Part shown: positions 9,780-38,622 of the stretch, one piece after another | Layout of the letters: every line of letters begins with the position of its first letter | Numbering within the stretch: the stretch's first letter is position 1 | Assembly (NCBI RefSeq): GCF_001194135.2 | Contig: NC_068996.1 | Coordinates: forward strand, 48,750,771 to 48,794,719 | Source of the DNA: Octopus bimaculoides | Taxonomy: Eukaryota | Length of the DNA stretch: 43,949 bases | Direction of reading: 5' to 3' | Translations under genes and position numbers: made by a program | The notes under the pieces: model-generated | Databases searched by the model: none | What the model saw: the letters and a program-made list of their open reading frames with translations, nothing else | Told to the model about the DNA's origin: nothing

Positions 9780-10143
9780 TACATAAGTTAGTGTGTAAGT
9801 GTATATGTGTGTTTGTGTGTGTATACATACTCACACATACATACATACATATATTACATACATACATACGTACATACATATATGCATACATACATACATA
9901 CACACGCATACATAGATACAAACATGCATGCATACATACATACATATATTCATACATACATACACACACATATACACACACACATACACCCACATACACA
10001 AACACATACATACATACATACACACATACATACATACACACATACATACATACAAACATACACACATACATACATACAAACATATATACATGCATACATA
10101 CAAACATATATACATACATACACACATACATACATACACGCAT

Positions 10144-10176
<33 letters not shown>

Positions 10177-10260
10177 TACACATACACACACACACACACA
10201 TATACATACATACATACATACATACATACATACATACCTGCATACATACATACATACATA
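9780..10260. repeat. Long (TACA)n/(CA)n microsatellite
   Basis: Directly visible, about 480 bp. Confidence 0.97.
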
Positions 10261-10520: not shown

Positions 10521-10684
10521 AGGACCGATTCCAGAGACAGACTGGGAAATGAGTCCAAAATATAACAAGCACTAGTGCTAATAGCAGTGCCCCAGTATGG
10601 CCACCACCTCTGACTAAAACTGATAATAGAATTATAGAATGATAGAACAATTTATGTATGTATGTATGTATGTATGTGTGTGAG

Positions 10685-10831
10685 AATAAGCTTGCTTCCC
10701 AGCCTCATGCACATGGTTCCAGGTTCAATCCCACTGCATGGCTCCTTGGGCAAGTGTCTTTAACTATAGCCTCAGGCTGATCAAAGCCTTGTGAGGGGAC
10801 TTGATAGACAGAAACTAAAAGAAGCCCATCT

Positions 10832-10883
<52 letters not shown>

Positions 10884-11150
10884 TGTATGTATGTATGTAT
10901 GTATGTATATATATTTGTGTGTATCTTTGTGTTCGCGTTTGTCCCCCCACCCCACCGTCACTTGACAACAGATGTTTGTGTGTTTACGTCCCCGTAAATT
11001 AGCGGTTCGGCAAAAGAAACAATCAAATAAGTACTAGGGTTTTAAAAAAAAAAAGTCCTGGGAATCGATTTGCTTCACTAAAACCCTTCAAGGTGGTGCT
11101 CCAGCACGGTCGCAGTCAAATGACTGAAACAAGTAAAAAACAAAAAAAGA
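10685..11150 (+). mobile_element. SINE family A, near full length
   Basis: Head, internal (TATG)n and 3' block present. Confidence 0.85.
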
Positions 11151-17635: not shown

Positions 17636-18013
17636 GTGCAGGCATGGCCATGTGATAAGAAATTTGCTTCCAACCACATGGTTCTGGGTTCAACCCACTG
17701 CATGACATCTTGGGCAAGCATCCTAGCCTTGGGCCAACTAAAGTCTTACAAGTAATTCTGGAAGATGGAAACTGAAAGAAGCCCTTCTATGTGTGTGTGT
17801 GCATGTCTCTTTCCATGACCACAGCTTGACAACTGATATTGGTTTGCTTATGCCCCTGTAACTTAGAAGTTCAGCAAAAGAAAACCAATTAAATAAATAC
17901 CAGACTTCAAAAAAAAATAGTACTGGTATTGATTTGTTCAACTAAAACCCTTCAAGGTGGTGCCCCAGCATGGCCACAGTCCAGTCACTGAAACAAGTAA
18001 AAGATAAAAGATA
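17636..18013 (+). mobile_element. SINE family A whose 3' end seeds a tandem array
   Basis: Head aggtgcaggcatggccatgtg at about 17636; 3' block is unit 1 of the array. Confidence 0.85.
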
Positions 18014-19077
18014 TACTGGTATTGATTTGTTCAACTAAAATCCTTCAAGGTGGTGCCCCAGCATGGCCATAGTCCAAAGATTGAAACAAGTAAAAGATAA
18101 AAGATATACTGGGATTGATTTGTTCAACTAAAACCCTTCGAGGTGGTGCTCCAGCATGGCCACAGTCCAATGACTGAAACAAGTAAAAGATAAAGGATAT
18201 ACTGGGATTGATTTGTTCAACTAAAACCCATCAAGGTGGTGCTCAGCATGGCCACAATCCAATGAGTGAAACAAGTAAAAGATAAAAGTTATATTGGGAT
18301 TGATTTGTTCAACTAAAACCCTTCAGGTGGTGCCCCAGCATGGCCACAGTGCAATGACTGAAACAAGTAAAAGATAAAAGATATATTGGGATTGATTTGT
18401 TCAACTAAAACCCTCCAAGGTGGTGCCCCAGCATGGCCACAGTCGAATGAGTGAAACAAGTAAAAGATAAAAGATATACTGGGATTGATTTGTTCAACTA
18501 AAACCCTTCAAGGTGGTGCCCCAGCATGGCCACAGTCCAATGACTGAAACAAGTAAAAGATAAAAGATATAGTGGGATTGATTTGTTCAACTAAAACCCT
18601 TCAAGGTAGTGCCCCAGCATGGCCACAGTCCAATGACTGAAACAAGTAAAAGATAAAAGCNNNNNNNNNNNNNNNNNNNNNNNNNNNNNNNNNNNNNNNN
18701 NNNNNNNNNNNNNNNNNNNNNNNNNNNNNNNNNNNNNNNNNNNNNNNNNNNNNNNNNNNNNNNNNNNNNNNNNNNNNNNNNNNNTAAAAGATAAAAGATA
18801 TACTGGGATTGATTTGTTCAACTAAAACCCTTCAAGATGGTGCCCCAGCATGGCCACAGTCCAATGACTGAAACAAGTAAAAGATAAAAGATATACTGGG
18901 ATTGATTTGTTCAACTAAAACCCTTCAAGGTGGTGCCCCAGCATGGCCACAGTCCAATGACTGAAACAAGTAAAAGATAAAAGATATAGTGGGATTGATT
19001 TGTTCAACTAAAACCCTTCAAGGTAGTGCCCCAGCATGGCCACAGTCCAATGACTGAAACAAGTAAAAGATAAAAGC
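17921..19077 (+). repeat. 93-bp tandem array derived from the SINE A 3' end
   Basis: Unit starts at 17921, 18014, 18107, 18200, 18292, 18384, 18477, 18570, [gap], 18801, 18894, 18987. Confidence 0.96.
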
Positions 19078-21472: not shown

Positions 21473-22049
21473 CATACATACATACACACACATATATATA
21501 TACACACACACACATTTATATATACACATACATATGCATATGCACGCGCATATATATATCTATATACATATATATATATATAGAGAGAGAAAAANNNNNN
21601 NNNNNNNNNNNNNNNNNNNNNNNNNNNNNNNNNNNNNNNNNNNNNNNNNNNNNNNNNNNNNNNNNNNNNNNNNNNNNNNNNNNNNNNNNNNNNNNNNNNN
21701 NNNNNNNNNNNNNNNNNNNNNNNNNNNNNNNNNNNNNNNNNNNNNNNNNNNNNNNNNNNNNNNNNNNNNNNNNNNNNNNNNNNNNNNNNNNNNNNNNNNN
21801 NNNNNNNNNNNNNNNNNNNNNNNNNNNNNNNNNNNNNNNNNNNNNNNNNNNNNNNNNNNNNNNNNNNNNNNNNNNNNNNNNNNNNNNNNNNNNNNNNNNN
21901 NNNNNNNNNNNNNNNNNNNNNNNNNNNNNNNNNNNNNNNNNNNNNNNNNNNNNNNNNNNNNNNNNNNNNNNNNNNNNNNNNNNNNNNNNNNNAAATATAT
22001 ATATATATATATATATACTTTATTTAAAAGCAGCAGAAATATAACAAAA

Positions 22050-36479: not shown

Positions 36480-36794
36480 ATATGTGACAGGCTCCTTTCA
36501 GTTTTCCATCTATCAAATCCAGTCTCGAGGTTCTGGTCGGCCTGAGGCTACAGTAGAAGACACTTGCCGAAGGTGNNNNNNNNNNNNNNNNNNNNNNNNN
36601 NNNNNNNNNNNNNNNNNNNNNNNNNNNNNNNNNNNNNNNNNNNNNNNNNNNNNNNNNNNNNNNNNNNNNNNNNNNNNNNNNNNNNNNNNNNNNNNNNNNN
36701 NNNNNNNNNNNNNNNNNNNNNNNNNNNNNNNNNNNNNNNNNNNNNNNNNNNNNNNNNNNNNNNNNNNNNNNNNNNNNNNNNNNNNNNNNNNNNN

Positions 36795-36864
<70 letters not shown>

Positions 36865-37357
36865 CCACCTCTTGACAACCAGAGTTGGTGTGTTTACATC
36901 CCTGTTACCTAGTGGTTCAGCAAAAGGAGAGAGACCCACAGGATAAATACCAGGCTTAAAGAAAAAAAGTATAATTTGTCTTTTATTTATTTTAGTCATT
37001 GGACTGTGGCAATGCTGGGGCAATGCTTTGAAGAATTTTTTTAGCTGAATGAATCAACCGCAATAGTTTTTTTTCTTTTTTATGCCTGGTTCTCATTCTA
37101 TTGGTTTCTTTTGCTAAACTGCTAAGTTACGGGGACATAAACACACCAACACCAGTTGTCAAGCAGTGGTGAACAACAAACACAGAGACAAAGGCACATA
37201 TGTGATGGGCTTCTTCCAGTTTCCTTCTACCAAATCCACTCACAAGACTTTGGTCAGTCCAAGGCTATAGTAGAAAACACTTGTCCCAAGGTTCCACACG
37301 ATGGGACTGAAACTGAAGCCATGTGGTTGGGAAGCAAATTTCTTACCACACAGCCAC
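36480..37357. mobile_element. Cluster of SINE family A copies in both orientations around a gap
   Basis: Minus head 36480-36575, plus 3' part 36863-36960, full minus copy about 36975-37357. Confidence 0.78.
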
Positions 37358-37419
37358 ATAGCTACGTAATATGTTCATCTCTGTTCTAAAAAAGGAAGCA
37401 AAAACATATTTTTTCAGAT

Positions 37420-38260
37420 AATCCATCTATCTTCACCCACAATTTTTTGGAGACTACTGATCGTATCCAATCTCTCGGTCTACTCCCAGGTCTCCTGCTT
37501 GTTAAAAAATCCATCTTAGAACATAGATGAATATGTTACGTAGCTATACAGCTTTTAGCAAGATGTGGCTGTGTGGTAAGAAATTTGCTTCCCAACCACA
37601 TGGCTTCAGTTTCAGTCCCATTGTGTGTAACCTTGGGACAAGTGTTTTCTACTATAGCCTTGGACTGACCAAAGTCTTGTTAAAAAATCCATCTTGTAAC
37701 TCATTTTTGTGACATTCTAATCACACATGTTCGTAGTACTGGAGCTGTGACCTCTCACTGCAGAGCTGTAATGGTTCAACCTGGAGAAATTCCTTGATCT
37801 CCAAGCTGTACATCATGTAGAGAAACACTACTCTGGAGATCCTTTGGAAGAACGCTCTCTCAGCTGCTTATATTTGTGATCATACTTTTTCAGTCATTAC
37901 CCATCATTCATGGTCATAGATGAGGATAAACATGGAAACCAAATTGAAGGTATCAAATTTGGATTTTTTTCACCAATTTCTTCTCTTCTGAAGATTGATT
38001 ATAGGATCTGGCCTATTACAGTGTCATCACCTGCAATTCTAGCATCCAATTCGGCCTTCTGCCTTCTCTTCATTTGTGAATGCAACACCAAGACACTTAA
38101 ACTTCTCCACTTGTATCAATGATGTTCCACTAACATAAACACTGGACTGGGAAAGCTTTTTTAAAAGGACCAATGTCTTAGTTTTCGCAACAATAATTCT
38201 CATTCCTTTCTTGCAGCATTCAGCAGTAAGCCCATTCAGTGCATGCAGATAATGTAAATG
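37420..38260 (-). mobile_element. RTE-clade LINE ORF2 C-terminal fragment
   Basis: MRIIVAKTKTLV...QVEKFKCLGVAFT, WVMTEK, QVEPLQL..ERSQLQYY and SRRPGSRPRDW. Confidence 0.85.
37516..37680 (+). repeat. Inverted local copy of 37242-37389, flanked by a 20-bp direct repeat
   Basis: 143/148 identity plus a 17-nt indel; cttgttaaaaaatccatctt at 37498-37517 and 37676-37695. Confidence 0.93.
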
Positions 38261-38284
38261 AAAATTTATTAAATCTTGTTTGTG

Positions 38285-38327
<43 letters not shown>

Positions 38328-38481: not shown

Positions 38482-38622
38482 GCTAATGAAATAAAACGCC
38501 AACATGGAGCTGTTACCATTCTTGTGAACAATGCTGGAATATTGGCCCCGGGGAATTTTCTGGAAGTTGAAGATGAGAAAATTGAGCAGATTTTCAAAGT
38601 TAACATGTTGGCTCATTTTAGG
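38482..38622 (+). CDS. SDR16C-family dehydrogenase/reductase, coding exon 3
   Basis: Acceptor ttccactgcag; ANEIKRQHGAVTILVNNAGILAPGNFLEVEDEKIEQIFKVNMLAHFR (NNAG motif); donor gtaagt at 38623. Confidence 0.93.

What the first reader, a model, noticed from the sequence alone, without database searches (positions are those of the whole stretch)
37242..37695. Inverted templated insertion of a neighbouring SINE/flank junction with a 20-bp target duplication
37516-37680 is an inverted copy of 37242-37389 (5 mismatches, one 17-nt indel). It includes about 30 bp of non-SINE flank (ttagaac...gtagctat), so it was copied from the local chromosome and not retrotransposed from a SINE master. It sits in an RTE relic between exact 20-bp direct repeats (cttgttaaaaaatccatctt), with cttgt microhomology at the right junction and tt at the left. 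This is a clean out-and-back template switch producing a hairpin with arms of about 150 bp in SDR intron 2, 800 bp upstream of exon 3.
Basis: partly seen in the sequence, partly recalled or inferred. Interest (0 to 1): 0.7.

Follow-up and report, generated by a model that had tools for sequence, protein, structure and literature searches.

The report
Local inverted copy of SINE head
A 158-165 bp piece of octopus intron DNA (the head of a SINE repeat plus its unique neighbouring bases) was copied backwards into a spot 126 bp away. It is a real but ordinary example of fold-back/template-switch mutation, and it leaves a long hairpin-forming inverted repeat with no sign of function so far.

Summary
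37516-37680 is the reverse complement of 37242-37389, with 5 mismatches and one 17-nt extra block in the right arm. The right arm lies between exact 20-bp direct repeats (37498-37517 and 37676-37695) inside a decayed LINE reverse-transcriptase relic. That relic sits in an intron about 800 bp upstream of a short-chain dehydrogenase exon.

- The 32-nt non-SINE flank is single-copy genome-wide. One unbranched 260-nt unitig at unique depth is seen in five individuals, even at 80% likeness.
- Contigs span both junctions, the right one in only one run.

The two arms share 18 differences from the SINE consensus and have 1 private difference each. Other SINE copies carry a different 5' leader.

The best explanation is one DNA-templated fold-back (four-point order 3-2-4-1). 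It was primed on 2 nt (tt) and returned on 5 nt (cttgt), 20 nt behind the departure point.

I could not exclude a retroelement nick or reverse transcriptase copying a local RNA. I also could not find an empty allele, explain the 17-nt block, or detect any RNA coverage or editing.

This is a new member of a known kind, large for its class. Interest is low to moderate.

The parts
36972..37358 (-). Full-length tRNA-derived SINE copy 'L'. Its head lies at 37242-37358 and its 3' tail near 36972. The usual 5' leader TATAGGTGCAGGC is missing.
   Evidence: blastn of this copy against the window finds about 12 other copies at 65-79% identity. The 5' and 3' end comparisons are.
37242..37389 (-). Source segment (left arm): SINE head 37242-37358 plus 31-32 nt of non-SINE flank, 37359-37389.
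   Evidence: define the arm. Searches show the flank is unique in the genome.
37390..37497 (-). Spacer, which forms the hairpin loop together with the left 20-mer. It is the tail of the LINE ORF2 relic (RRPGSRPRDWIRSVVSKKLWVKIDGLSE) and is single-copy.
   Evidence: tblastn of homologues reaches about 37413. The stretch is unique at 80% likeness.
37498..37517 (+). Left copy of the 20-bp duplicated target, CTTGTTAAAAAATCCATCTT.
   Evidence: family D4.
37516..37547 (+). Inverted copy of the non-SINE flank, with 3 mismatches to the source. Its first two bases (tt) overlap the left 20-mer.
   Evidence: pair I3.
37548..37564 (+). 17-nt block ACAGCTTTTAGCAAGAT, present only in the right arm and bounded by AT..AT. 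Its origin is unknown.
   Evidence: One search shows the indel. One search finds no other copy in the window with up to 3 mismatches.
37565..37680 (+). Inverted copy of the SINE head, with 2 mismatches to the source. It stops at ...CCAAAGTCTTGT, and its last 5 nt (cttgt) overlap the right 20-mer.
   Evidence: pair I1.
37676..37695 (+). Right copy of the 20-bp duplicated target.
   Evidence: family D4. An X1 contig runs 37657-37765 with 0 mismatches.
37696..38280 (-). Remainder of the LINE reverse-transcriptase C-terminal relic, which carries several stops and frameshifts.
   Evidence: Six-frame translation. Homologues at E=5e-35 to 1e-9, one of them with RVT_1. tblastn.
38482..38622 (+). Host-gene exon (short-chain dehydrogenase/reductase, ...TILVNNAGI...), preceded by AG and followed by GTAAGT.
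   Evidence: for the sequence; for adh_short at E=1e-9.

Best explanation
The right arm is a secondary, DNA-templated, inverted duplication of the adjacent L SINE head and its 5' flank, made in one local template-switch (fold-back) event.

Inferred sequence of steps:
1. A 3' DNA end finishing in ...AAAAAATCCATCTT (37517) left its template. It was either a nascent strand at a stalled fork or the 3' tail of a staggered break.
2. It folded back about 126 nt and paired its terminal TT with AA at 37388-37389.
3. It was extended leftwards along the same or the sister strand for about 150 nt, to about 37242-37247. This writes the reverse complement of the flank plus the SINE head.
4. The new 3' end ...CTTGT then re-annealed to CTTGT at 37498-37502, which is 20 nt behind the departure point. 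Normal synthesis or ligation resumed, so the 20-mer is present twice.

In four-point notation the order is 3-2-4-1.

What is shown: the anatomy, the local origin, the uniqueness and both junctions. What is inferred: DNA rather than RNA as the template, and the order of steps.

The product is a 148/165-nt near-perfect inverted repeat with a 126-nt loop. It would fold as a long dsRNA hairpin in the host pre-mRNA (-287 kcal/mol). No function is indicated.
For: - Anatomy and microhomologies.
- Shared history of the arms: 18 shared derived SINE states against 1 private each.
- Different 5' sequence elsewhere: the other window copies and thousands of genomic copies have a different 5' leader and diverge from both arms at the same base.
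- Single-copy flank and loop: one 260-nt unbranched unitig (37331-37590) at unique depth (56/11.7/55/46.8, and about 5 in X1 as two contigs) in five individuals. Nothing else in the genome matches at 88% or 80% likeness.
- No empty-allele branch at the left 20-mer, since the unitig is unbranched with k=31 greater than 20.
- Right junction: present in X1 contigs at unique depth.
- Pre-event state: LINE paralogues read ...AAAAA(T/C)CCATCTT|GTGATT... with one 20-mer-like motif. Protein homologues align across the reconstructed empty site.
- Proximity: 126 bp between source and copy is what a fold-back predicts and what a trans-acting process does not.
- Literature: fold-back templated inversions of 2 to about 150 bp, with 0-5 bp capture microhomology, are documented at yeast DSBs (PMC11724301). 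Four-point events with point 4 before point 1 are documented in apes (PMC7954356).
- Mismatch pattern: 3/32 mismatches in the first-copied flank against 2/116 later (Fisher p=0.07), plus the 17-nt block. This fits error-prone initiation but is only suggestive.
Against: - No empty allele or outgroup state was obtained, so the insertion polarity rests on anatomy and paralogues.
- The 17-nt block is not explained by a single clean switch.
- At about 150 nt of copied tract, the event is at or above the upper end of reported short-range events. The largest was 59 bp in PMC8794818 and about 150 bp in PMC11724301.
- A 20-bp duplication is also the classic footprint of staggered LINE-endonuclease nicks.
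- A weak candidate target duplication for L (TCCTTTTTT / TACTTTTTT, 8/9) would place the flank inside L's own insertion unit. Both arms would then start at the same base, which an RNA template with a fixed 5' end would explain better.
- The right junction is seen only in X1 contigs.
Confidence: 0.7

Rival explanations
1. Retroelement-initiated event. A LINE endonuclease made nicks staggered by 20 nt in the LINE relic. One 3'-OH was then extended by reverse transcriptase on a local RNA. The RNA was either the host pre-mRNA, primed TT on the A6 run at 37388-37393, or a minus-strand transcript through L, primed ACAAG on CUUGU. The other end was joined by microhomology. The product is identical to the one observed.
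For: - The 20-bp duplication lies within the range typical of TPRT; 12-18 bp is quoted for L1 in PMC11702581.
- That paper also reports templated insertions and other alterations at ORF2p-induced breaks.
- Both junction microhomologies fit priming or 5'-end joining.
- The left junction falls at the edge of an A6 run.
- The possible L target duplication would give L and R the same 5' end.
Against: - A trans RNA has no reason to land 126 bp from its source in a genome of roughly 2-3 Gb.
- There is no 3' tail or A tail next to the duplication.
- The nick sites (AACAAG|CAGGAG or ATCTT|GTAAC) do not resemble a T-rich/A EN motif, although the specificity of the octopus LINE is unknown.
- The 5 mismatches show no A>G excess.
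- No transcription of this stretch was detected.
Confidence: 0.13
2. Two independent retrotranspositions of a SINE subfamily or master whose transcript carries a 30-50-nt 5' leader (5' transduction). They happened to land 126 bp apart in opposite orientation.
For: - Both arms begin at the same base (TTAGAAC).
- There is a weak candidate target duplication for L immediately outside that base.
Against: - No third copy of the leader exists in the contigs of five individuals at 80-88% likeness.
- The R-specific and L-specific 82-nt unitigs are at about 1.4-1.5x unique depth, not multi-copy.
- R lacks the SINE 3' tail that LINE-mediated insertion needs.
- Chance adjacency of the only two copies is of order 1e-6.
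Confidence: 0.02
3. Assembly artefact or polymorphic mis-join. The inverted copy, or at least its right junction, does not exist in most genomes.
For: - The window comes from a gapped scaffold, with N runs up to 36794 and at 21595-21993.
- The right-junction words are held only by X1 contigs and are absent from X2, X3 and X4 contigs and from 0.7x raw-read samples of X19 and X20.
Against: - The left junction and the interior of R are in independent Illumina unitigs of five samples at unique depth.
- An X1 unitig spans 37657-37905 exactly.
- X5, X7 and X13 come from the same animal as X1 and also lack the words. That points to graph simplification next to extremely high-copy SINE k-mers, with depth above 200,000 at 37650-37674, rather than to true absence.
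- The expected raw-read count was only about 1-2.
Confidence: 0.04
4. Two unrelated SINE insertions that were later homogenised by gene conversion.
For: Inverted repeats 200 bp apart can undergo gene conversion.
Against: - Conversion would replace sequence, not insert it.
- The shared tract includes non-SINE flank and ends exactly at a 20-bp duplication.
- R has no SINE body or tail.
Confidence: 0.02

Closest known systems
Short-range template-switch mutations (four-point model; Loytynoja & Goldman 2017; Walker et al. 2021, PMC7954356; Monttinen & Loytynoja 2022, PMC8794818)
   Same: A reverse-complement copy of nearby sequence is inserted in a single event and creates a perfect or near-perfect hairpin stem de novo. 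Events with return point 4 upstream of departure point 1 are described, and these duplicate the interval between them.
   Different: The copied tract of about 150-165 nt is several-fold longer than typical reported events (tens of bases; largest 59 bp in PMC8794818). There is a 17-nt unexplained block. The ancestral state is inferred rather than observed.
Fold-back (snap-back) templated inverted insertions at double-strand breaks (Pol delta + NHEJ/alt-EJ in yeast, PMC11724301; Pol theta-type templated insertions from general knowledge)
   Same: A 3' end folds back on short inverted microhomology with a loop of tens of nucleotides. It is extended and unwound, then captured by the other end with 0-5 bp of microhomology. 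Sizes up to about 150 bp are reported.
   Different: Here the loop is 126 nt and the priming microhomology is only 2 nt. A 20-bp duplication requires either a staggered break with 3' overhangs or re-annealing behind the break. No genetic data exist for cephalopods.
LINE-mediated SINE retrotransposition (TPRT), including twin priming and 5' transduction
   Same: The insert is flanked by a 20-bp target duplication and has microhomology at its junctions. It lies in a genome rich in active-looking SINE/LINE families.
   Different: There is no 3' tail. The insert is 3'-truncated rather than 5'-truncated. It carries unique flanking DNA from a source 126 bp away. It is not adjacent to a co-inserted 3' segment, as twin priming requires.
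Inverted SINE pairs as ADAR substrates (e.g. PMC5625713)
   Same: Two inverted SINE-derived arms in one intron are predicted to fold into a long, nearly perfect dsRNA. Octopus bimaculoides is reported there to have an exceptionally high density of such structures and of hyper-editing.
   Different: The pair arose by local duplication, not by two insertions, so it is far more perfect (97%) than ordinary pairs in the window (65-85%). No RNA coverage or editing was seen here.

Membership tests
Short-range template-switch mutation (four-point model) | The inserted segment is the reverse complement of a nearby segment (2->3). | tested here: met
   148 nt against 165 nt, with 5 mismatches and one indel. 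Source and copy are 126 bp apart.
Short-range template-switch mutation (four-point model) | The three fragments L->1, 2->3 and 4->R explain the whole derived sequence with nothing left over. | tested here: inconclusive
   Everything is explained except the 17-nt block 37548-37564. That block may be a later deletion in L or an extra step in the event.
Short-range template-switch mutation (four-point model) | The ancestral (pre-event) sequence is observed in an outgroup or sister lineage. | not testable with these tools
   Contigs of other species match only LINE or SINE paralogues, and no empty allele was seen in five individuals. The pre-event state is inferred from LINE paralogues and protein colinearity.
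Fold-back templated insertion at a DSB | There is microhomology at the priming site and at capture by the second end. | tested here: met
   tt (2 nt) and cttgt (5 nt). The chance of at least 5 nt at a random junction is about 0.001.
Fold-back templated insertion at a DSB | Dependence on Pol delta/Pol theta and on end-joining factors. | not testable with these tools
   This needs genetics or an induced-break assay.
LINE-mediated SINE retrotransposition (TPRT) | Target-site duplication flanking the insert. | tested here: met
   20/20 exact.
LINE-mediated SINE retrotransposition (TPRT) | The insert ends in the SINE/LINE 3' tail next to the 3' duplication. | tested here: not met
   R stops at SINE position about 180 of about 446. 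The 3' ~270 nt are absent.
LINE-mediated SINE retrotransposition (TPRT) | The insert corresponds to the family consensus or a multi-copy subfamily, and its 5' end is at or inside the SINE. | tested here: not met
   There are 32-49 nt of non-SINE sequence upstream of the SINE head. That sequence is unique in the genome.
Twin-priming inversion | The inverted 5' segment directly abuts the 3' segment inside a single pair of target duplications. | tested here: not met
   L and R are separated by 126 bp of LINE target DNA, and only R is bracketed by the 20-mer.
MITE / foldback DNA transposon | Terminal inverted repeats with a target duplication flanking the whole element, and multiple copies in the genome. 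| tested here: not met
   The 20-mer brackets only one arm. The left arm continues into a full SINE. The unit is single-copy.

The most novel reading that the evidence does not exclude
The 20-bp duplication is the footprint of a LINE endonuclease. Aborted or misdirected retrotransposition at such staggered nicks was resolved by fold-back DNA synthesis or by reverse transcription of the nascent local transcript. On this reading the process is a recurrent source of near-perfect local inverted duplications in octopus. It would then contribute to the species' exceptional load of long dsRNA and hyper-editing substrates.
Probability: 0.12. Interest if true: 0.55.

Novelty: new member of a known kind. 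Interest (0 to 1): 0.3.

Why it matters
The locus is a well-documented natural example of a large (about 150 nt) single-step template-switch or fold-back insertion in a cephalopod germ line. It shows how a near-perfect 150-bp-stem hairpin can appear in an intron in one mutation, without two transposon insertions.

If events like this are common, they could help explain why Octopus bimaculoides has so many long, nearly perfect dsRNA structures (PMC5625713). By itself the locus shows no evidence of expression, editing or any effect on the neighbouring SDR exon. Its value is therefore as a mutational-mechanism specimen, not as a functional element.

Tried and rejected
- RNA evidence. Three 2026 RNA-seq runs (X27-X29, about 6% of each read) gave zero reads on the unique parts 37369-37557 and 37684-37725. 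Every laid read was a partial hit from another SINE copy. Editing and splicing effects could therefore not be assessed.
- Empty allele or orthologue. Contigs of four other species (X12, X14, X16, X17) at 80% likeness matched only SINE heads and a 32-nt LINE piece. Five individuals of the same species show no branch at the left 20-mer.
- Is the flank part of the LINE tail?
  - Paralogues could not be aligned to 37359-37500 even at 80%.
  - tblastn with homologues proves LINE coding sequence only down to about 37413.
  - An in-frame 'NRDEH' in the flank resembles the DRxxW tail motif, but the spacing is off by 3-6 residues. This test is inconclusive.
- Pfam on my stitched LINE translation gave no hit. 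The relic's identity came instead from a homologue search and from RVT_1 in homologue P0008.
- Source of the 17-nt block. Nothing else in the window matches it with up to 3 mismatches on either strand.
- ARAGORN finds no tRNA in 36900-37800. The tRNA-like A and B boxes of the SINE head are my reading of the sequence only.
- Target duplications of other SINE copies, meant to calibrate LINE-typical lengths, are too decayed to use.
- The first read-laying run failed because the stretch included (GT)n.
- Rejected readings: gene conversion, twin priming, MITE, an independent SINE insertion, and R as the source of L. The reasons are given under the rival explanations and the membership tests.

Full report
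**Observation**

Reading 36900-38100 and running repeat finder confirm the structure.
- 37242-37359 pairs with 37563-37680 (118 nt, 98% complementary).
- 37358-37389 pairs with 37516-37547 (32 nt, 91%).
- A MAFFT alignment of the reverse-complemented left arm with the right arm shows 5 mismatches. It also shows one 17-nt block (ACAGCTTTTAGCAAGAT, 37548-37564) that is present only in the right arm.
- The 20-mer CTTGTTAAAAAATCCATCTT is exact at 37498-37517 and 37676-37695.
- Homology to the left arm overlaps the left 20-mer by tt and the right 20-mer by cttgt.
- In the whole window this is the only spaced inverted repeat above 85% identity. The apparent 224-nt one at 21569-22017 is an N run.

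**What the pieces are**

- Left arm. It is the head of a full-length tRNA-derived SINE on the minus strand (about 36972-37358).
  - blastn finds about a dozen other copies in the window, all only 65-79% identical to it.
  - Those copies carry the leader ...TATAGGTGCAGGC immediately upstream of RTGGCTGTGTGG.
  - Loose-end consensuses from tens of thousands of genomic and transcript SINE fragments show the same leader.
  - They diverge from the left arm at 37356-37358 and from the right arm at 37564-37566.
  - The 32 nt TTAGAAC...GTAGCTAT are therefore not part of the SINE family.
- Host DNA. It is a decayed LINE ORF2 C-terminus on the minus strand.
  - Six-frame translation shows ...VEKFKCLGVAFT...YDHE*WVMTEK...ERSQLQYYEHV...RRPGSRPRDWIRSV....
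  - A stitched translation finds homologues at E=5e-35 to 1e-9. One of them carries RVT_1.
  - tblastn places coding homology down to about 37413.
  - I did not verify that the LINE belongs to the RTE clade.
- Host gene. The exon at 38482-38622 on the + strand encodes ...TILVNNAGI... and hits adh_short at E=1e-9. The structure therefore lies in an intron about 800 bp upstream of that exon.

**Is the right arm a copy of the left arm or a member of a subfamily?**

Three lines of evidence bear on this.
1. Shared substitutions. Over the SINE head the two arms share 18 differences from the consensus of nine other window copies, and each has 1 private difference.
2. Copy number.
   - Logan contigs of DNA runs from five individuals of the species (X1-X4, X6) each contain a single unbranched unitig covering 37331-37590. 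In the 5x run X1 it is two overlapping contigs.
   - Its depth is the unique depth: 56.4, 11.7, 55 and 46.8, against 53.9 for a neighbouring 569-nt unique unitig.
   - Nothing else in those assemblies matches 37340-37580 at 88% or 37359-37500 at 80%.
   - The arm-specific 82-nt unitigs are at about 1.4-1.5x unique depth.
It was tested and is not met.
3. Not a normal SINE insertion. The right arm stops at SINE position about 180 of 446, directly against the duplicated 20-mer, and lacks the 3' tail.

**Pre-event state**

No empty allele was found.
- The left-junction unitig is unbranched although k=31 exceeds the 20-nt repeat. The sampled animals therefore carry the insertion on both haplotypes.
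- Contigs from other species do not reach the orthologous intron.
- LINE paralogues in this and other species read ...AAAAATCATCTTGTGATTCT and ...AAAAACCCATCTTGTGATTGTTT, which is one 20-mer-like motif followed by GTRAYT.
- Protein homologues align colinearly across the locus once the insert and one 20-mer are removed.

**Junction support**

- The left junction is in five samples.
- The right junction is in one X1 unitig (37657-37905, 0 mismatches, unique depth).
- The right junction is missing from X2-X4 contigs and from 0.7x raw-read samples of X19 and X20.
- The word index finds the right-junction words only in X1, and not in X5, X7 or X13, which come from the same animal.
- The missing piece would be an unitig of about 85 nt wedged between SINE k-mers of depth above 200,000 and a moderately repeated LINE segment.
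- I therefore attribute the absence to assembly-graph simplification. This remains unproven and is listed as a rival.

**Mechanism**

The product is exactly what one fold-back or out-and-back switch gives.
1. A 3' end at 37517 pairs its TT with AA at 37388-37389.
2. It copies leftwards to about 37242.
3. It returns on CTTGT to 37498, which duplicates 37498-37517.

This is order 3-2-4-1 in the four-point model. Such events, including ones with point 4 before point 1, are documented (PMC7954356). Fold-back templated inversions of 2 to about 150 bp with 0-5 bp capture microhomology are documented at yeast breaks (PMC11724301).

- The distance of only 126 bp between source and copy is the strongest argument for a cis DNA mechanism.
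- Mismatches are enriched in the first-copied 32 nt (3/32 against 2/116, p=0.07). Together with the 17-nt block at that boundary, this hints at sloppy initiation but is not significant.
- Arm divergence is 3.4%, so the event is not recent. Zero changes in the 20-mers is expected at that divergence (P=0.5).

**Rival that cannot be excluded**

Staggered LINE-endonuclease nicks give 12-18-bp duplications for L1, and templated insertions are reported at ORF2p breaks (PMC11702581). Such nicks could be followed by fold-back synthesis or by reverse transcription of a local RNA, and the product would be the same.

A weak 8/9 T-rich match (TCCTTTTTT / TACTTTTTT) brackets the L SINE plus its flank. If it is real, both arms would share an RNA-like 5' end. 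Against this:
- LINE coding homology runs to within 24 nt of the flank, and homologues continue for at least 20 more codons.
- There is no tail, no EN-like motif and no A>G bias.
- No transcription was detected.

**Consequences**

As RNA, 37230-37700 folds into one long hairpin (-286.9 kcal/mol, z=-27). Octopus is known for abundant long dsRNA and hyper-editing (PMC5625713). The three RNA runs available gave no reads on the unique parts of this intron, so editing or splicing effects remain untested.

**Verdict**

This is a large but otherwise ordinary member of the template-switch/fold-back class of structural mutation, fixed in the sampled animals, with no evidence of function. Interest is 0.3.

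Noticed in passing
window 17912-18659 and 18785-19076: A 93-bp-period tandem array (8.1 + 3.1 copies, 93-98% matches) whose unit is the 3' part of the same SINE family (...CCCCAGCATGGCCACAGTCCAATGACTGAAACAAGTAAAAGAT). It directly follows a full SINE copy at 17645-18008, so this looks like a SINE tail amplified into a satellite.
   Followed up: partly
window <=36600-36794 and 21595-21993: Assembly gaps (N runs). The first ends only about 450 bp upstream of the left arm. The second produces spurious 224-nt 'inverted repeats' in the repeat finder.
   Followed up: yes
window 36834-36968: An older SINE fragment on the + strand, 73-75% identical to L. It lies tail-to-tail with L and is cut off at its internal A-rich stretch exactly where L's 3' end begins. 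The missing 3' about 95 nt are on neither side of L nor beyond the LINE relic, so L's own insertion history is unclear: deletion, or a co-inserted LINE+SINE unit.
   Followed up: partly
window 36795-36863 and 38277-38326: (GT)n microsatellites lie on both sides of the SINE/LINE block.
   Followed up: no
window 37681-37735: The words of the right-junction stretch are in Logan contigs of only one run (X1). They are not in three other runs of the same animal or in high-coverage runs of other animals. The cause is probably contig-graph simplification next to very high-copy SINE k-mers.
   Followed up: partly
window 37420-37428 versus 37508-37516 / 37686-37694: The 9-nt direct repeat AATCCATCT occurs in the loop and again inside the duplicated 20-mer (family D3). 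Any relevance to strand re-annealing is unknown.
   Followed up: no
window 37390-38280 (LINE relic): The closest protein relatives in the database are unnamed ORF fragments from metagenome or ENA contigs and 'uncharacterised proteins' of the sea spider Pycnogonum litorale (37-47% identity). No cephalopod entries were returned.
   Followed up: no
window 9900-10260 versus 10831-10942: Many overlapping 75-85% inverted matches, which look like complementary short-period repeats next to a SINE copy at 10661-11144.
   Followed up: no
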